This document shows, piece after piece, positions 1-7,783 of a stretch of 7,794 nt of DNA. The stretch is from Selaginella moellendorffii. Taxonomy: Eukaryota; Plantae; Lycopodiophyta. Position numbers and translations under genes: made by a program. The notes beneath the pieces were generated by a model, which saw only the letters and a list, made by a program, of their open reading frames with translations, searched no databases and was not told the origin of the DNA. Location of the stretch: positions 1 through 7,794 of the forward strand of contig NW_003314654.1 of the NCBI RefSeq assembly GCF_000143415.4, given 5' to 3'. Every line of letters starts with the position of its first letter. Within the stretch, counting starts at the first letter, position 1.

Positions 1-1933
1 ACTTTCCTCGCCCATCAGCGTCTAAGCATCAATCTTTTTTAAAAAAATTGGTAATATTATTGCAGAATGGCAGCCTTCTTTGAGAGAGTTGGCAGGGCCA
101 TACCTGTACGTTCTATAGGCAGACGACTCAAAGAACAGCCCACATCAATGCATGAGCTACTCCTCAAAGGACAGGAGGAAAGCCTCCTCTACCCTGGAAA
201 TCCCAAGCTTTTGGAGACCATCACACTCTAGAGTCTCTACTGCAATGAAAGGCCCATGACATACTGGAAACTCTCACTTAAGCATCTTGCACTGGAGATT
301 TCCCTTGTGGCCGGAGATGAATGCGGTGATGTTGTGATGTTGTGAGGTTTATTTATGATGCACTTGCACTGGACACACTTCTTCCAGTAAGATCTGAACC
401 ACATCACGTACTCTAGTCTAGATTCATATGCTTTTTGTTGAAAAATGAACAAGGTTATGAGTAAGTGATTTGCTAGTCATTATTGATCAAAGTGATTTTG
501 GAAAGATGCTTTGAATGTGGAGTAGTTAACTATGTTTGCCTCCAAAAGAGTGTTTTTTCCATGTTGTTTGGCCAATGAGTGATTGCAAAAAGTTGTAAAG
601 CTTGTGCCAATGCTATTTGATGGACAATATTGTTCAAAGTGAGTGATATATGTTTTGGCAAAGATGTCACCATTGCTAAAGAAGTGTGCCTTGCTATAGA
701 ATATGGATGTGCATGGGGAGAACCATCAATGGTAGACTCTTTCACTCAGTATCTATGGTAAACAATGCTTCTTTCTTGCTAGAAAGAGCATTTTGGTAAT
801 CTAGCTTGCATAGGTATCAAAACATCCCTATACCCTATGCATTATATGAAAGATTATTGGCTGCCATCTCTGCCTGAAATGAGTTTGAACTAGCATAATA
901 AAGTGTCTAATATGTAGCAAATGCCAAGTCATAGAAAGATGTTAAAGAATTTTAATTTGTGTCAGAATAAAATGTCCAAAATGGGATAGTTCCAAATAAA
1001 TAAGTATACTACTGTGGATTTCCCCTAACCAAGATTGTTGTCCTTTTGCAAATCCCAATTCCTCATAAAGAAAAGAGAAATTTAGCTATAAAATTGAAGA
1101 AAGATATGAAAGATATCATGAAAGAATATAGATATAGGATATCACCTAAAAACAGTGGAAAAAAAAAAAACAAAGAAAAAAAGCTATAACTTTTAAAATG
1201 TTTCAAAGTGAATATGAAATTTGATATAGACTCATTAAAAAAGCTTATACTTAAACAAAGAGAATGAGATTAAAACGATGGAGCTAAAACACCAAAATGC
1301 CTGTAGAAAACTGATTTAAACTTTAAATTTATAACTCATGTAATTATGAGATAAGATTTAGATATATTATTATTATGAATCTTTGGAACCTTGAGGATCC
1401 ATTTGGACAATTTCCTTGTTTTAACACACACATTTTGAGTTTTCAACTGTGGAGTGATAAATATGTTAAAGGCTATATTATCAAATAATTTCCCCTTTTT
1501 CAATTTGTTGGTGAAATTTTTTTTGCTACCTTGGAGTAGGAAAATATATGGTGCTTGCTTCACTTAGATTAGGATTAACTTGTTGTAGTTAGTGATGAAG
1601 CACAAGTGAAAACTCATGAGAGGGAAATAAGTGGGAGATTATTTTAAGCCTAGATAAAAAATTTGATGATTTACAAATGAAAAAAGTCTATATTAATGGG
1701 AACAATAGTATATAGTTGGTTAATTAGGATGTGATTATAGGATGAGATTTAGATAACTATCATTATAGATCCTTGAGATAAAATAGCTATTAAATTTATT
1801 TTTATTAAATAATTACCTTTTCTCCAGTTGACTTAAATAAAATATGTTACATTTGGTTAGGATGGGTTCAATTCCTAAGAAAGTGGCACATTCACAAAAT
1901 GAGGAAACCGAAGTGGCATAATATTTATATATA

Positions 1934-2138
1934 GGAGAAAAAATATTTAAAAAAACGAGGGGCACATCACAATTATAAGGAAGGGGTACAACATTCAGAA
2001 AGAAGAGAAACATAAAATGGAAAAAAAATATTAAAAAAAGAGAAAAGAAGATAAGAAAAAGTCACCAAAAAGAGAAAAAATATTAAAAAAAGGAGGAGGA
2101 AGACTTTTAAAGAGGATAAAAAATATTAAAAACGAAGG
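1934..2138. repeat. Purine-rich low-complexity region with four degenerate copies of AAAAAATATTAAAAA
   Basis: Copies at about 1934-1962, 2019-2040, 2072-2100 and 2114-2138, each flanked by GA-rich sequence. There is strong A/G strand skew across ~1930-2290. Confidence 0.65.
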
Positions 2139-2397
2139 AGAGAGGAAAAGGTCTATGGTAGAGGAGACAAGAAAACATAATAGAGTGGGGAAATATAATA
2201 TAGTTGAATGTTCAATAGGTGTTAGCTGTCATTAAATTTCATTATTTCTAATCTAATAGAGGAGAGGACAAAAGAGAAAAATTGTATAAATAGACTTCAT
2301 TTGCGAGGGTGGAAGAAAATTTTTACTAATCAAAATGCAGCAATTCAAACTTTAGGCTCCAGTCGCCTTTGATGCATTACTGCTGGTGCTAGCACTG

Positions 2398-3225
2398 TGT
2401 AAGGAACCGATTCCCTAAGATGTCGTAGGCTAAAGGATCCCCGAAAGCATGACTGAAATGACAAAGAGTTCATCGGATGGGACCGAGTCGAAGATTGAGT
2501 CCAAGACCGACTCTGAGACCGAGTCTAGATAGAGTCCGGGATCGAGTCCGAGACCGAATCGGAGACCGAGTTCGAGACCGAGGTTGAGACTGGGGCCGAG
2601 GGGCCTTGGGTGGGAGTGAGCATGGGCTTGAGTGGTGCCGGAGGGGCCACCTAGGGAAGTGCTCAAGAGCAGCTCCCACTCCCGAAAGGGAAATCGATTG
2701 CAGTGCTCCCGGCTCATGTGGAGTGGTGCCCCACTTGAGTACCTTGTGGCTCATTGGTCCTCGCCCTTCCTAGGGGCTTGGGCCTTCATTTCGGGATGGA
2801 AGTGGGGGGGTAGAGGTACCCATATTGGGCCGTTAGGCCACGGTGTTTCGCCCCAACGTCCCGAAGCAAGTGCTACACCCAAGGCTTGGGATTTAGAGGG
2901 TCCCATGATCAAGTTTTATGGTACCAAGGGGTGTTAGGAATCTGGAGGCTTGGTGTGCTTGGCTGCTTGTGCCTGTGGGGAGTGTAGCTGAACCTTAAGT
3001 CCAGTCTAACCCGGGGAGGGGGATTGGGAGAGATTTGGGAATCCGTAGATGGATGGCTAACACTTCGTTGCTCGTGCAGTGAGTAGCTGAGACCAAGTAT
3101 GACCAAGTAAGAGCTGGTACCATAGGCAAGAACCTTGGCGAGGGAACTTAGCACAAGCCAAGGCAGTGTTGGTCGGATAGACGAGGTAAGCTGGCAAATT
3201 GGAAAGGAAAAATTTGTGGCTTACA
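2398..3225 (+). repeat. 5' LTR (828 bp)
   Basis: Starts TGTAAG (2398-2403) and ends CTTACA (3220-3225), a perfect 6-bp terminal inverted repeat with TG...CA ends. The 3' end sits 3 nt (ATT) before the PBS. The 5' boundary coincides with the composition shift but cannot be confirmed without the 3' LTR. Predicted TSD is CACTG (2393-2397). Confidence 0.82.
2481..2599 (+). repeat. Degenerate 12-bp tandem repeat (~10 copies, consensus GACCGAGTCCGA) in the U3 part of the LTR
   Basis: Units: gaccgagtcgaa, gattgagtccaa, gaccgactctga, gaccgagtcta (11 nt), gatagagtccgg, gatcgagtccga, gaccgaatcgga, gaccgagttcga, gaccgaggttga, gactggggccga. Confidence 0.9.
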
Positions 3226-3251
3226 ATTTGGTATCGAAGCGTTTTCCTCAG
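3186..3251 (+). other. Candidate 5'-leader intron spanning the LTR 3' end and PBS (66 nt)
   Basis: Strong donor GAG|GTAAGC at 3186 and a pyrimidine-tract acceptor TTTTCCTCAG| ending at 3251 (alternative TTCTAG| at 3257), upstream of the gag ATG at 3285. There is no protein frame to validate it. Confidence 0.5.
3229..3240 (+). promoter_or_regulatory. Primer binding site, initiator Met-tRNA (plant type)
   Basis: TGGTATCGAAGC lies immediately after the LTR-terminal CA plus ATT. It matches the canonical plant tRNAiMet PBS TGGTATCAGAGC at 10/12 positions, and one difference is a G:U-compatible change. Confidence 0.88.
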
Positions 3252-3284: not shown

Positions 3285-4370
3285 ATGGCAAAGGCAGGGC
3301 GAAAGCGAACCCAGGCGGAGATAGAACCTCCGCCAGAGCTGGAGCCTCCGGTCGAACAAGAGGCTATGGATGAGGAATCCTTGCATGAGGAGGACTCCAG
3401 TGAGGAAACATCCAAACAGGAGTCCGGTGGCGAGGTTCGGTCGTCCAAGGCTCGATTGGACGTTCTAGAAAGACAATTGGCACAGACCAATGCCCTGCTA
3501 GAGACTCTCGTACACAAGCTAAAGTGTGACGAGAAGCGGAAGAAAAAGTGAAAGACTGCGGATGCTGGCAGCGCAGAAGGTGTGGACCCTTCGGCAGGGA
3601 CTAAGGCAAAACCAGACAAGGTCGAACAGACCGAAGTGGAATCAATCCCTCAGGCAGTTCCCAAGTACAAAACAAAGCCCCCACCGGTCTTCAAGGGAGT
3701 GAACGACTATAAGGTGGTGGAGGATTGGTTTTATGATATGGAGGACTATTTCTGAGCGTTGCGATTACCGAGCTCGGAGAAGGTCCCATGTGCAAAACCA
3801 TACTTGGCAGATAATGCCAAGTCTTGGTGGAGAACGACAGAGGCCAACGAAGGACCGGTGGCCACTTGGGAAATGATGAAGGCGAGGATCCGCGCAACTT
3901 ACGTTCCTCCGAATGCTACTCTGCATCTAAGGGACGAGCTGAGTAGGCTGAAGCAGACCAAAACCATTCAGGAGTATGTGAATGGGTTTATGGCAAAGAG
4001 GATACTTGTCATGGACATGGGGGATATGGATGCGTTCCATGCCTTCATATCAGGTTTGCAAACCTGGGCTCGCGGTGAAGTGATGCGATGGAACCTGACC
4101 AACTACAAGGAAGCGTTGGATGCGGCCATCAAGGTGCATTTCAACGATAACCTGCGAAAGGGGAACACGACGAGGTCGGGATGCATGTTTAGCAAAGGGG
4201 CCAAACCAAGGGGAACGTTTAGCAGAGGGAAATTCAAGAAGAGTTTCTCTAAGAATGAGTCTTCGGGGTTCCGGAAAGGCAAATTTGGTGGCCAGCGAGC
4301 GAGTACGTGGGGGAGTCAAGCGAAAAGAGACAAACCCACAGATAAGAAGGTCAAGTCATATAGCAGCTAG
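3285..4370 (+). pseudogene. gag: gag (retrotransposon capsid), interrupted by two in-frame stops
   Basis: ORFs 3285-3551 and 3759-4370 are in the same frame and join through TGA at 3549-3551 and 3753-3755. Gag motifs: PPVFKGVNDYKVVEDWFYDMEDYF, YLADNAKSWW, TWEMMKARIRATY, LSRLKQTKTIQEYVNGF, AFISGLQ. The C-terminus is basic and no CCHC zinc knuckle is visible. Confidence 0.9.
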
Positions 4371-4575
4371 AAGATCTAGGGTGGAGGCCTAGGATCTAAA
4401 GGTAGGGCAAAGCAAGGCCAAAGAATCCTGCTTAAACTTGGTGTCCACGAGAGGACAACTCACTAAAGGAACTAAGGCAGCATTTTTGTGCTTACTCTCG
4501 GTGAAGAGTGACAAAAAGACAGGAACGGAAAAAGTACCTTTAGTGATCCAACGGGTGTTGGACCAATTCCAGGAT

Positions 4576-5520
4576 ACCATGCCGGAGGAGTTACCGGCGG
4601 GGTTGCCCCCCGCACGATCGATAGAACATAAGATTGAGCTGGTCGAGGGTGCTGAGGCGGTGGTTCGTCCCCCCTATCGTTTGAATGAGAAAGAACTTGA
4701 GGAGCTCAAGCGCCAACTAGAGGAGTTGGTGGACAGAGGGTATGTTAGGTTGAGCAAGTCGCTGTATGGGGCGTTGGTGTTATTTGTGAAAAAGAAAGAT
4801 GGATCTATGTGCATGTGCATAGACTACCGATTGCTCAACAAGTATACAAAGAAGAACAAGTACCCTTTGCCTATGATTGAGGACCTATTTGATAGGTTGG
4901 GAAAGGCAAAATACTTCTCGAGAATTGACCTGAGGTCAGGATACTACCAGATCAGGGTAGCAGAGGAAGATGTCGAGAAGACAACCTGTCGAACCAGGTA
5001 TGGGAGCTTTGAGTTTCTGGTCATGCCCTTTGGGCTGTGCAATGCGCCGGCAACGTTTTCAGCGTTGATGAACCATATCTTTGTACCCTATTTGGATCAC
5101 TTCGTGGTCGTCTATATTGACGACATCCTAATCTATAGCGAGATGCTAGAGGAGCATGCCGAACACTTGGCGAAGGTATTTGAGAAACTAAGGGAACACA
5201 AACTATATGCTAAAGAGAGCAAATGTGACTTTGCTCAACAAGAGGTAAAGTTTCTCGGGCATGTGGTGGGCCAGGACGGGCTCAAGGTGGACCCAGAGAA
5301 GGTCCAAGCGATCCAGGAATGGGAGCGACCATCAAATGTACATAAGTTGAGGGCGTTCTTGGGGCTATGCAACTACTATCGAAAGTTTATCAGACACTAT
5401 TCGAGAGTAGCCCTGCCCTTAACAGACCAAACAGGAAAAGGGAAGATGGTATGGACAGCGGAATGCAAGGCGGCATTCGTCCACCTCAAAGGGAAGTTGA
5501 GGAAGGCTCCAGTGTTGGCA
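4576..5520 (+). other. Reverse transcriptase domain (approximate bounds)
   Basis: Motifs: [36 protein letters not shown] (D at 4927), [12 protein letters not shown], catalytic YIDD (5113-5124), [16 protein letters not shown]. Confidence 0.97.
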
Positions 5521-5883
5521 TTACCAGATTTTGGTAAGGACTTTGAGGTAGACACGGATGCTTCGGACTTTGCGTTGGGCACAGTTTTGAAGCAAGACAA
5601 CTATCCAATAGCGTTCTTCTCGAAGAAGTTGGACAAGGCTCAACGGAAGTGGCCTGCCCACGAGAAGGAATTGTTTGTGGTGGTCAAGGCGCTCAAGGAT
5701 TGGCAACACTACCTTGGGAAACACTTCAAGGTTTACACGGACAATGTGGCAACGAAACACTTCTTGTCACAGCCCGACCTGAGAGGGAAACAAGGTTGGT
5801 AGGCCAATGCCTTGGCCGAGTTTGATTGCGAGATTCTGTACAAGCATGGGAAGAGCAACATCGTGGCGGATGCGCTAAGTCGA
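5521..5883 (+). other. RNase H domain
   Basis: [10 protein letters not shown] (D 5557), HEKEL (E 5668), VYTDN (D 5740), NIVADALSR (D 5869). A TAG at 5800 falls where the conserved W of the Q-x-R-W motif is expected. Confidence 0.95.
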
Positions 5884-6625
5884 AAAGCGAGCTTGAGGTT
5901 GGCGATATCCAACGCAACAGCAACCTTCTGGGACAATGTGCGGACAGCATATGAGAACGATGGTCTAGCACAAGAAGTGTTGCTGAGGAATCTAGAAGCA
6001 CGGGAAGCTCACCAGAGAGGTGAGCTGCCAACGGAAGAAAAAACGGGCTATGCGGAACGCAACGGACTCATCTATTACAAGCAAACGAGGGTGTATGTTC
6101 CAGAAGCGGAACTAAGGAAGGTAGCTTTAGAAGAGTGTCATGACGGACCTCTTGCGGGACACAGCGGAATGCCCAAGACGATGGGCTTACTCAAGAGGAA
6201 GTACCATTGGCCAGATATGGCTAAGGACGTCCAAGACTATGTAAAGATATGTCCAACATGTCAGCAGGTCAAAGCCGTGACTAAGGCTAGTGGGGGCTTG
6301 TTGCAAAGCATCCCAATTCCAGATCATCCGTGGAAATGTCTTATGATGGACTTCATCACGAGACTTCCCCCAAGCGAGGGGTTTGGTGCGATATTCGTGG
6401 TGGTGGACCGATTTTCGAAAATGGCACATTTCATACCCACCACAATGGAAGTGGATGCGGAAGGTGTGGCGAAGCTATTCTTCGAACAAGTGGTTCGAGT
6501 GCGGGGAAGGTCGGAAAAGATCATCTCAGACCAAGATAAGATCTTCACTAGTAGGTTCTAGAGGACTCTCCTAGAACAGTATCGCACCAAGTTGAAATTC
6601 AGCACAGCCTATCACCCACAGACAG

Positions 6626-6672
6626 GTATGGGGTATTAAGTCAAGTTGGTTGGCACTAACACTTCTTGATAG
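6626..6672 (+). other. Putative spliceosomal intron 1 in the integrase catalytic core (47 nt, phase 1)
   Basis: CAG|GTATGG ... CACTAAC (6654-6660) ACTTCTTGATAG|AC. Removal restores the codon GAC and the motif HPQTDGQTERVN, with exactly 35 residues between D(6529) and E(6684). Confidence 0.88.
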
Positions 6673-7090
6673 ACGGACAAACGGAAAGGGTGAATAGGCA
6701 GCTGGAGGATTATTTGCGATGCTATGTCTCAGGAGACCACACCGATTGGGTAAGTCATTTGGGACTTGCAGAAATATGTTATAACAACTCACCATATTCG
6801 AGTATCAGGGTGAGTCCATGGGAAGTCATCAATGGGCGAGCTATTGAAGGTCTTGTGGAGCTCGGTGTGGCCGAGTACCATGGAGAGTTACCCGCAGTGG
6901 AGGCATTCATGGCGGAAAGACTCAGCATTTAGAATCTAGTGAGGGATTCCTTGGAACGGGCTCAACAAAGGCAAACCAAATACGTGAACCAGAAGCGTCA
7001 GGATGTAGAGTTCCAAGCTGGGGAAAAGGTGTGGCTGAACACCAAGAACCTCAGGCTACCAAGTGGGATCAGCCGAAAGTTGACCCAAAG

Positions 7091-7142
7091 GTAAAAATGC
7101 ATGTATTCCTGTAAATGAATTGATCTTGAGTTCCTTAAGCAG
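7091..7142 (+). other. Putative spliceosomal intron 2 in the integrase C-terminal region (52 nt, phase 2)
   Basis: AAG|GTAAAA ... TTGAT (7120-7124) ... TTCCTTAAGCAG|GT, 17/52 GC. Removal restores the codon AGG and the motif SRKLTQRFAGPYEI, in frame with the chromodomain. Confidence 0.87.
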
Positions 7143-7317
7143 GTTCGCGGGGCCTTACGAGATCGAGACACGAATCGGTAAAGTGGCTTACCGACTCTGA
7201 CTTCCTCGAGAGATGGGGAAGATGCACCCAGTGTTCCGCGTGAACTTACTCAAGCCGTACTTTGAGGATCCGCTTCGCAAGGACCAAGTAAAACCTTTAC
7301 CTGAGGTTATCCAAGGG

Positions 7318-7485
7318 GAAGAGGAATACGAAGTTGAGGCCATCCTCAATGCGCGCAAGAGCAAGTGACAAGGACGCAAGGTGAAAGAGTTCCATGTGAA
7401 GTGGAAAGGATTTCCACACTGCGAAGCAACGTGGGAACCGGAGGAGAACCTAGAAAACGCACGAGATCTAATGGAGGAATTTCTG
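7318..7485 (+). other. Integrase C-terminal chromodomain
   Basis: EEEYEVEAILNARKSK*QGRKVKEFHVKWKGFPHCEATWEPEENLENARDLMEEFL. Aromatic-cage positions are Y 7327, W 7402 and F 7411; there is an internal TGA at 7366. Confidence 0.93.
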
Positions 7486-7585
7486 CAAGGCAGAACTCTA
7501 TGCATTTATGCAAAGTTCAATTAAAGTATCAATTTGTGGAGTTGAGCAATGGCATATGTTGGGACCCGAAAGCGCGCCGAAGGTA

Positions 7586-7783
7586 AGCTAATTAGCATGG
7601 GTTAGCTAGGTCGACCAGGCATAGGGCACTACGCCCGACTCCCCGTAGGGATGTCAAATCCATAGAAATATTCTACGGAGGTTGGGTTCAAGTCCCAACC
7701 CCCTAGTAAAGCAAGGCTGGGTTCAAGTCCCGACCCTATACTAGGGCGTGGTGAGGTGAGGAGTGTAGGGACACCTATACTCC
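7586..7783 (+). other. Structured 3' UTR: hairpin array including two tRNA T-arm-like stem-loops
   Basis: Hand-paired stems: 7586-93/7600-07, 7627-36/7744-53, 7637-43/7648-55, 7659-67/7671-79, 7680-86/7694-7700, 7701-08/7739-46, 7715-21/7729-35, 7760-69/7774-83. GGGTTCAAGTCCC occurs twice. Confidence 0.7.

What the first reader, a model, noticed from the sequence alone, without database searches (positions are those of the whole stretch)
7091..7142. Second intron splitting the integrase GPY/F module and gating the chromodomain
Seen: a 52-nt AT-rich insert, AAG|GTAAAA...TTCCTTAAGCAG|GT, lies within the Arg codon of RKLTQ-R-FAGPYEI. Unspliced, TAA (7092-7094) follows immediately; spliced, the frame continues through GPY, HPVF and the chromodomain. 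The insert is unrelated in sequence to intron 1, so two independent inserts both have exact GT-AG, frame-restoring ends, which makes chance insertion unlikely. AGGT is present at both junctions (proto-splice site, or a duplication from the intron-gain event). Inference: splicing of intron 1 only would give an integrase lacking GPY/F and the chromodomain, so alternative splicing could switch integrase activity or targeting.
Basis: partly seen in the sequence, partly recalled or inferred. Interest (0 to 1): 0.85.

Follow-up and report, generated by a model that had tools for sequence, protein, structure and literature searches.

The report
Spliced intron inside a retrotransposon integrase
A 52-base insert in the integrase gene of a plant-type LTR retrotransposon is a real GT-AG intron that is missing from assembled transcripts, so this mobile element needs host splicing to make complete integrase, which is unusual because retrotransposons normally lose introns when they copy themselves.

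Summary
Positions 7091-7142 are a 52-nt, AT-rich GT...AG insert inside an Arg codon of a Ty3/gypsy chromovirus integrase, with TAA straight after the donor site. Removing it restores the frame through GPY, HPVF and an HP1-like chromodomain. It also restores the KL-5 residues-GP spacing seen in 90 homologues.

In one run of the same organism (library type guessed as RNA), a 2.5-kb contig about 5% diverged from the window skips exactly this 52 nt. The same contig skips the 47-nt intron 1 (6626-6672), and a second contig skips a 66-nt leader intron that holds the candidate primer-binding site.

The three nearest relatives I could fetch (RT identity 61% or less) are continuous at both integrase positions. 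The introns are therefore lineage-specific insertions.

Intron-containing words also occur in many small runs of one sample and in two probable RNA runs.

The intron sits at about position 24 of 63 inside the SH3-like fold, not at a module boundary.

This window copy is dead: seven in-frame stops and a protease-region deletion.

The scan has already noted the same 52-nt intron on many other pieces of this genome; I could not check those notes. Closest precedent: the Ogre intron. Verdict: new variant of a known kind.

The parts
7091..7142 (+). Intron 2. It is 52 nt, GTAAAA...AAGCAG, phase 2 inside an Arg codon, with an in-frame TAA at 7092-7094 and a YTRAY-like TTGAT about 17 nt before the acceptor.
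   Evidence: Sequence. Skipped exactly (GT..AG, 52 nt) by a 2500-nt contig of run X1. Homologue spacing is restored after removal.
6626..6672 (+). Intron 1. It is 47 nt, GTATGG...ACTAAC...GATAG, and splits AYHPQT|DGQTERVN just before the catalytic Glu of the D,D35E triad. An in-frame TAA lies at 6637-6639.
   Evidence: Sequence. Skipped by the same X1 contig and by one raw RNA-seq read of X15. 130 of 132 homologue alignments are gap-free across the junction.
3186..3251 (+). Leader intron. It is 66 nt, GTAAGC...TTTTCCTCAG, upstream of gag.
   Evidence: Skipped (66 nt, GT..AG) by a 1041-nt X1 contig. Sequence.
3229..3240 (+). Candidate primer-binding site TGGTATCGAAGC, three bases after a ...CA, lying inside the leader intron.
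   Evidence: Sequence. The resemblance to the plant tRNA-iMet type PBS (10 of 12) is recalled from memory, not tested. The LTR end is not verified because the 3' LTR is outside the window.
3285..4370 (+). gag, with internal TGA stops at 3549 and 3753.
   Evidence: PF03732 E=2.4e-14. Stops.
4367..4369 (+). Deletion point. The expressed relative has 377 extra letters here, where relatives encode the protease. This copy has no protease domain.
   Evidence: X1 contig record 2 shows 'skips 1, 377 letters between'. No protease hit in the window pieces, but relatives have one.
4438..6625 (+). pol exon before intron 1: RT, RNase H, integrase zinc finger and most of the catalytic core. In-frame TAG at 5800 and 6559.
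   Evidence: PF00078 4e-37, PF17919, PF17917, PF17921 1e-20, PF00665 2e-5. Stops.
6673..7090 (+). Exon between the two introns: DGQTERVN (catalytic Glu), the end of the core and the first third of the SH3-like (GPY/F) domain. In-frame TAG at 6930.
7143..7524 (+). Last exon: FAGPYEI, MHPVF (rest of the SH3-like domain) and an HP1-like chromodomain with Tyr/Trp/Phe at the aromatic-cage positions. In-frame TGA at 7198 and 7366; pol stop TAA at 7522-7524.
   Evidence: PF24626 weak and PF00385 6e-13. Alignment to L001 and L003. The cage assignment is by eye against HP1, from memory.

Best explanation
Positions 7091-7142 are a genuine U2-type spliceosomal intron. It was inserted into the integrase C-terminal SH3-like (GPY/F) domain of a multi-copy chromovirus family of a land plant, and the family has kept it.

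Shown:
- The insert has GT..AG ends.
- It interrupts a conserved frame and carries an immediate stop.
- It is absent, to the base, from an assembled transcript-type contig of a related copy. That contig also lacks intron 1.

Inferred mechanism: the family makes two kinds of RNA.
- Unspliced RNA keeps the primer-binding site and serves as the template for reverse transcription. It can encode Gag, protease, RT and RNase H, but only an integrase cut off before its catalytic Glu.
- Fully spliced RNA encodes complete integrase with GPY/F and chromodomain. It has lost the leader intron that holds the candidate primer-binding site, so it cannot be copied back into DNA.

This arrangement would explain why the introns survive retrotransposition. 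It would also make integrase supply depend on the extent of splicing, as in Ogre elements.

The copy in this window is itself inactive, with seven in-frame stops and the protease region deleted.
For: - Sequence and frame.
- Chance rate of GT..AG ends is 0.5% per segment.
- An X1 contig (2500 nt, depth 11.2, about 5% different from the window) lies on 4875-6623 | 6671-7088 | 7141-7470, skipping 47 and 52 nt, both GT..AG. A second contig skips the 66-nt leader intron. One raw read from a declared RNA-seq library (X15) skips intron 1. All.
- 90 homologue alignments span junction 2 with KL-5 residues-GP spacing, 72 of them gap-free within 6 residues. For junction 1 the figure is 130 of 132..
- Relatives L001, L002 and L003 have uninterrupted DNA at both positions, so the segments are insertions and not intronised coding sequence.
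- Words that contain the intron are held at 0.89 by at least 18 small runs of one sample and at 0.33 by two probable RNA runs.
- 27 of the 40 listed differences between the window and the expressed contig fall at codon position 3 (p=1e-5). The two lineages therefore diverged under coding constraint.
- The candidate PBS lies inside the leader intron.
Against: - The library type of X1 is only guessed as RNA, and contigs carry no read-level counts.
- The three declared RNA-seq runs gave 9, 3 and 0 reads, and none spans intron 2.
- I could not fetch a single other genomic copy of the family, so conservation of the splice sites across copies rests on k-mer shares and on unchecked scan notes.
- I could not search for intron-less genomic copies.
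- The PBS and LTR end are not verified because the 3' LTR is outside the window.
- Partly spliced RNAs that keep the leader but lose the integrase introns would yield intron-less copies. The division-of-labour model therefore needs coupled splicing or selection, and neither is shown.
Confidence: 0.8

Rival explanations
1. One reading: a regulated alternative-splicing switch. Intron 2 would be retained in a controlled way to make a functional integrase isoform without GPY/F and chromodomain, changing activity or targeting.
For: Retention gives an immediate stop. Intron-containing words occur in two probable RNA runs, while a spliced contig occurs in another. Both forms may therefore exist as RNA.
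Against: No record has intron 1 removed and intron 2 kept. The intron lies at about position 24 of 63 within the SH3_Tf2-1 fold, so the retained product ends mid-domain rather than at a module boundary. The intron-containing RNA could simply be the unspliced genomic RNA or carried-over DNA.
Confidence: 0.1
2. The inserts are never spliced. The intron-less contigs would come from intron-less genomic copies of the family, either transcribed or present as DNA in the library. The 52 nt would then be an insertion carried by only part of the family.
For: X1's library type is guessed. The tool warns that DNA can be present in such runs and that a joined form may exist as DNA. Retrotransposition of spliced RNA is the expected way to make such copies.
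Against: All three skipped segments have exact GT..AG ends (chance 0.5% each). The leader-less form lacks the candidate PBS and could hardly arise by retrotransposition. One read from a declared RNA-seq library crosses the intron 1 junction. The form that assembles in the small runs of sample S9 is the intron-containing one.
Confidence: 0.07
3. A chance indel in a decayed pseudogene copy that happens to look like an intron.
For: This copy is clearly decaying: seven in-frame stops, a 377-nt deletion, and an excess of G>A and C>T changes relative to the expressed copy.
Against: Exact GT..AG ends and frame restoration occur at two independent inserts. The insert is skipped exactly in a contig from a different copy. 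Intron-containing words are shared by many runs.
Confidence: 0.02

Closest known systems
[quoted passage not shown]
   Same: An LTR retrotransposon whose full polyprotein can be translated only after a spliceosomal intron is removed. The intron persists in genomic copies. The extent of splicing could set how much of the downstream enzymes is made.
   Different: Ogre is a non-chromovirus with one intron that lies between reading frames. Here there are two very short introns (47 and 52 nt) inside integrase domains, one at the catalytic core and one in the SH3-like fold. There is also a leader intron that contains the candidate PBS. Partial splicing is not demonstrated here.
Subgenomic gag RNA made by alternative splicing in Ty1/copia elements (EVADE in Arabidopsis; reviewed in PMC12786077)
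   Same: Host splicing of a retrotransposon transcript yields a second mRNA species with a different coding capacity.
   Different: In those elements splicing removes pol sequence to give a Gag-only mRNA, and the unspliced RNA encodes everything. Here the unspliced RNA cannot encode active integrase, and splicing is needed to complete Pol.
Retroviral and Cer1-type handling of unspliced genomic RNA (PMC10309623, abstract)
   Same: The element must export and use an RNA that still carries functional splice sites as the template or genome, alongside spliced mRNAs.
   Different: In retroviruses and Cer1 the unspliced RNA is the Gag-Pol mRNA. In those systems no intron interrupts an enzyme domain.
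Plant and fungal chromoviruses without introns: nearest fetched relatives L001 (ENA metagenome contig), L002, and L003 (GCA_000205645.1 contig)
   Same: The same domain order: gag, protease, RT, RNase H, H2C2 zinc finger, rve core, SH3_Tf2-1, chromodomain. RT identity is 56-61% and integrase identity 40-48%.
   Different: Their DNA is continuous at both intron positions.
Introner elements (transposons that create introns; PMC12130899)
   Same: A short insertion with splice sites, and AGGT at both junctions that could be read as a target duplication.
   Different: No second copy of the 52-mer in the window and no similarity among the three introns. A genome-wide copy number could not be obtained. 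The AG|G repeat is expected from the splice consensus alone.

Membership tests
Ty3/gypsy chromovirus (Metaviridae) | gag capsid domain | tested here: met
   PF03732 E=2.4e-14 on 3759-4367.
Ty3/gypsy chromovirus (Metaviridae) | Domain order RT, then RNase H, then integrase (zinc finger plus rve core) | tested here: met
   PF00078 4e-37, PF17919 and PF17917, PF17921 1e-20. The rve hit is E=2e-5, below the gathering score on the truncated piece. Full-length alignment to homologues.
Ty3/gypsy chromovirus (Metaviridae) | Chromodomain at the integrase C-terminus, after the GPY/F (SH3-like) module | tested here: met
   PF00385 6e-13 on 7369-7518. PF24626 is weak on the piece. Alignment to the SH3 and chromo domains of L001 and L003.
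Ty3/gypsy chromovirus (Metaviridae) | Aspartic protease between gag and RT | tested here: not met
   No protease hit in this copy. The expressed relative has 377 extra letters at 4367/4369 and relatives have the domain. This reads as a deletion in this copy, not a family trait.
Ty3/gypsy chromovirus (Metaviridae) | Two LTRs, a PBS and a PPT | tested here: inconclusive
   Candidate PBS at 3229-3240. No repeat was found between the 5' region and the last 290 nt. The 3' LTR appears to lie beyond the window.
U2-type spliceosomal intron | GT at the 5' end and AG at the 3' end | tested here: met
   GTAAAA...GCAG at 7091-7142.
U2-type spliceosomal intron | Present in DNA and precisely absent from RNA | tested here: met
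   An X1 contig skips exactly 52 nt. Caveat: the library type of X1 is guessed, and no raw read spans this junction.
U2-type spliceosomal intron | Removal restores a conserved reading frame | tested here: met
U2-type spliceosomal intron | Branch point and dependence on the spliceosome | not testable with these tools
   A YTRAY-like TTGAT lies about 17 nt upstream of the AG, seen by eye only. There are no lariat or inhibitor data.
Ogre-like splicing-gated polyprotein | Only a subset of transcripts is spliced | tested here: inconclusive
   A spliced contig in X1. Intron-containing words at 0.33 in the probable RNA runs X3 and X38. No read counts.
Introner (intron-generating transposon) | Many near-identical copies of the intron sequence in unrelated genes | not tested
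   Only the window could be searched, and it holds no second copy.

The most novel reading that the evidence does not exclude
A land-plant chromovirus family has kept three spliceosomal introns through many rounds of retrotransposition by dividing labour between two RNAs. Only unspliced RNA carries the primer-binding site and is reverse-transcribed. Only fully spliced RNA, which has lost that site with the leader intron, encodes catalytically complete, chromodomain-bearing integrase. Integrase is therefore always supplied in trans, and its dose is set by host splicing.
Probability: 0.4. Interest if true: 0.8.

Novelty: new variant of a known kind. Interest (0 to 1): 0.62.

Why it matters
Loss of an intron during transposition is the classic proof that an element moves through RNA (the Ty experiment recalled in PMC12786077). 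The same review states that plant LTR retrotransposons generally lack introns, with Ogre and EVADE as exceptions.

A family that keeps introns inside the integrase catalytic core and the SH3-like domain raises a clear question: how does the template RNA escape splicing while the mRNA is spliced? It also offers a candidate answer, a leader intron that removes the primer-binding site.

If that answer holds, integrase supply would be tied to the host spliceosome. It would be a natural case of trans-complementation between two RNAs of one element. It would also matter for annotation, because pipelines that expect uninterrupted pol frames will call such elements defective.

Tried and rejected
1. 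Fetching other copies of the family, which all failed to find one.
- An exhaustive phmmer search with the integrase piece gave a best identity of 52%.
- Word-indexed searches with the RT piece (best 61%) and the integrase piece (best 53%) found no family member.
- A JGI metagenome scan gave only hits at 37% and 28%.
- As a result, conservation of the splice sites across copies could not be tested directly.

2. LTR pairing. No repeat was found between the 5' region and the last 290 nt, either in plain or in purine/pyrimidine coding. The 3' LTR is probably outside the window.

3. The tRNA-like GGTTCAAGTCC motifs at 7683-7735 and 1863. ARAGORN found no tRNA and Rfam gave no hit at E<=0.1.

4. Intronisation of pre-existing coding sequence. 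Rejected, because homologues have no residues corresponding to the excised segments.

5. AGGT as a target-site duplication. Not rejected, but it carries little weight because AG|G is the splice consensus.

6. Literature. Six full-text searches and checks of two chromovirus surveys found no description of introns inside a chromovirus integrase (49, 50). The library lacks most subscription journals, so this is not proof of novelty. The Ogre splicing paper itself was not held.

7. Handling of the broken gene. Stops were read as X, and only inside local scripts.

Full report
**What is in the window**

The window holds one Ty3/gypsy chromovirus on the + strand.
- Pfam scans of the stop-free pieces give gag (PF03732), RT (PF00078), RNase H (PF17919 and PF17917), the integrase H2C2 zinc finger (PF17921), the rve core, a weak SH3_Tf2-1 match and a C-terminal chromodomain (PF00385, E=6e-13).
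- gag lies at 3285-4370 and pol starts near 4438.
- The upstream 2.3 kb is AT-rich and strongly CpG-depleted (CpG observed/expected 0.16-0.20, against 0.72 in pol).

**The observation**

At 7091-7142 there is a 52-nt segment, GTAAAA...AAGCAG, with 33% GC against 49-52% in the flanking exons. It lies inside the Arg codon AG|G of ...RKLTQ-R-FAGPYEI.
- Read straight through, the frame meets TAA at 7092-7094.
- With this segment and 6626-6672 removed, one frame runs from 4438 to the TAA at 7522-7524, through GPY, MHPVF and the chromodomain.
- Only 0.5% of all 40-70-nt segments of this pol have GT..AG ends. Two unrelated inserts that both have them, and both restore the frame, are not a chance result.
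- The 52-mer occurs nowhere else in the window and resembles neither intron 1 nor the leader intron.

**Is the excision point right?**

I translated the integrase region locally with both segments removed and every in-frame stop written as X. I compared it with the 150 best proteins from an exhaustive phmmer search.
- Ninety alignments span junction 2. They show the conserved KL, five residues, then GP(Y/F) spacing, and 72 are gap-free within six residues of the junction. The remaining gaps fall in the variable loop just upstream.
- At junction 1, 130 of 132 alignments are gap-free.
- The excised segments therefore have no counterpart in homologues. They are insertions, not coding sequence that became intronic.

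**Is it spliced?**

- In run X1 a 2500-nt contig (depth 11.2, about 5% different from the window) lies on 4875-6623, 6671-7088 and 7141-7470. It skips exactly 47 nt and 52 nt, both reported as GT..AG.
- A second X1 contig skips 66 nt in the leader, which after the stated two-base shift is 3186-3251, GTAAGC...CCTCAG.
- One raw read of the declared RNA-seq run X15 crosses the intron 1 junction with 44 letters on its shorter side.
- The raw runs otherwise held almost nothing (9, 3 and 0 reads). The element is nearly silent in those samples, and no raw read tests intron 2.

Two caveats apply. The library type of X1 is only guessed as RNA, and contigs give presence, not proportions.

**Could the contigs come from intron-less DNA copies?**

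I could not search DNA reads, so this is not excluded. It is unlikely for four reasons.
- All three missing segments end in GT..AG.
- The leader-less form lacks the candidate primer-binding site, so it could not easily have arisen by retrotransposition.
- A read from a declared RNA library shows one of the junctions.
- The form that assembles in at least 18 small runs of one sample is the intron-containing one. Of nine sampled 31-mers from 7061-7172, all of which overlap the intron, 0.89 are held.

Two probable RNA runs (X3, X38) hold 0.33 of those intron-containing words. Unspliced RNA therefore probably exists as well, although DNA carry-over would look the same.

**Relatives**

No member of the same family could be fetched. 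Best identities were 52%, 61% for RT, 53% for integrase and 37% in JGI metagenomes.

The three nearest elements whose DNA I obtained are L001 and L002 (metagenome contigs) and L003 (a GCA_000205645.1 contig). All are continuous across ...AYHP(E/Q)TDGQTE..., and L001 and L003 are also continuous across ...KL....GP(Y/F)... (L002 ends before that point). The introns are therefore a derived feature of this lineage.

Within the lineage, 27 of the 40 listed differences between the window and the expressed contig fall at third codon positions (binomial p=1e-5). The two copies therefore belong to sublineages that diverged while pol was under selection, not only by decay.

Scan notes report the same 52-letter and 47-letter introns on many other pieces of this genome. 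These are unchecked AI notes, and I treat them as leads only.

**Position in the protein**

- In L001 the SH3_Tf2-1 domain spans residues 251-313, and the residue aligned to the split Arg is about 274. Intron 2 therefore sits about a third of the way into the SH3-like fold, not between modules.
- Intron 1 sits at the end of the rve model, between HPQT and DGQTE. That is just before the third catalytic residue of the D,D35E triad, an assignment from established knowledge of retroviral-type integrases.
- Unspliced RNA would end Pol at ...AYHPQTGMGY, with TAA at 6637-6639.
- RNA lacking only intron 1 would end at ...KLTQR.

**Mechanism**

Shown: three short GT..AG introns, each absent from transcript-type contigs.

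Inferred: the leader intron contains TGGTATCGAAGC at 3229-3240, three bases after a CA. This resembles the tRNA-iMet type primer-binding site of plant LTR elements, a resemblance recalled from memory (10 of 12 positions) and not tested.

If that is the primer-binding site, fully spliced RNA cannot prime reverse transcription. Only unspliced RNA can be copied, and that RNA cannot encode active integrase. This would explain how introns persist in an element that replicates through RNA. It would also make integrase a trans-supplied product dosed by splicing.

I put about 0.8 on 'real, spliced intron' and about 0.4 on the full division-of-labour model.

It fits poorly with a break in the middle of a fold, and I give it about 0.1.

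**State of this copy**

This copy is inactive.
- It has in-frame stops at 3549 and 3753 in gag, and at 5800, 6559, 6930, 7198 and 7366 in pol.
- Relative to the expressed copy it lacks 377 letters at 4367/4369, where relatives encode the protease.
- Differences from the contig are skewed: the window has A or T where the contig has G or C 125 times, against 52 the other way. This fits deamination-type decay.

**Comparison with what is known**

- Plant LTR retrotransposons 'generally lack introns', with Ogre and EVADE as the noted exceptions (PMC12786077).
[quoted passage not shown] That is the closest precedent in logic.
- The present case differs in lineage (a chromovirus with an HP1-like chromodomain), in number and size of introns, in their location inside integrase domains, and in the PBS-bearing leader intron.
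- Copia and EVADE-type splicing does the opposite: it removes pol to give a Gag-only mRNA.
- Six full-text searches and two chromovirus surveys gave no description of integrase introns. The library is incomplete, so I class this as a new variant of a known kind, not as categorically new.

**Host**

Other scan notes mention PLS-type PPR gene arrays in this genome. The nearest RT relatives are plant chromoviruses. One probable DNA run assembles to only 118 Mb. Together with the 47-66-nt introns, this suggests a small-genome land plant. This is inference only.

Noticed in passing
window 3186-3251: A 66-nt GT..AG leader intron is skipped by an X1 contig. It contains the candidate primer-binding site TGGTATCGAAGC (3229-3240), so spliced RNA would lack the site needed for reverse transcription.
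   Followed up: partly
window 6626-6672: The 47-nt intron 1, with an ACTAAC branch-like motif, splits HPQT|DGQTE just before the catalytic Glu. It is skipped by the same contig as intron 2 and by one raw RNA-seq read.
   Followed up: yes
window 4367-4369: The expressed relative has 377 extra letters here. This copy has lost the protease-coding region between gag and RT.
   Followed up: partly
window 4875-7470: Differences from the expressed contig cluster at third codon positions (27 of the 40 listed, p=1e-5). They are also skewed towards A or T in the window (125 against 52). This indicates divergence under selection between sublineages, plus deamination-type decay of this copy.
   Followed up: partly
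window 2473-2595: An array of about ten imperfect 12-nt units (GAGTCCGAGACC-like) in the GC-rich region upstream of the leader, presumably inside the 5' LTR.
   Followed up: no
window 7679-7743 and 1859-1888: A repeated GGTTCAAGTCC motif, like a tRNA T-arm, occurs twice after the pol stop and once in the upstream AT-rich region. ARAGORN finds no tRNA and Rfam gives no hit.
   Followed up: partly
window 1-2300: The upstream flank is AT-rich (down to 24% GC) and very CpG-poor (observed/expected 0.16-0.20). It has A-rich repeats (AAAAAATATTAAAAA) at 1928-2150. It looks like old, methylation-decayed sequence.
   Followed up: no
window 7301-7518: The chromodomain keeps an HP1-like KWKGF...TWEPEENL core with Tyr/Trp/Phe at the aromatic-cage positions (the canonical group-I type), although the nearest RT relatives are plant chromoviruses.
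   Followed up: no
runs X24-X37, sample S9: At least 18 very small runs (3-4 Mb of contigs each) of one sample all hold 8 of 9 intron-2 words, but only about 0.25 of the words of 5900-7520. The intron 2 stretch of this copy therefore seems closer to the abundant form than the rest of the copy is.
   Followed up: no
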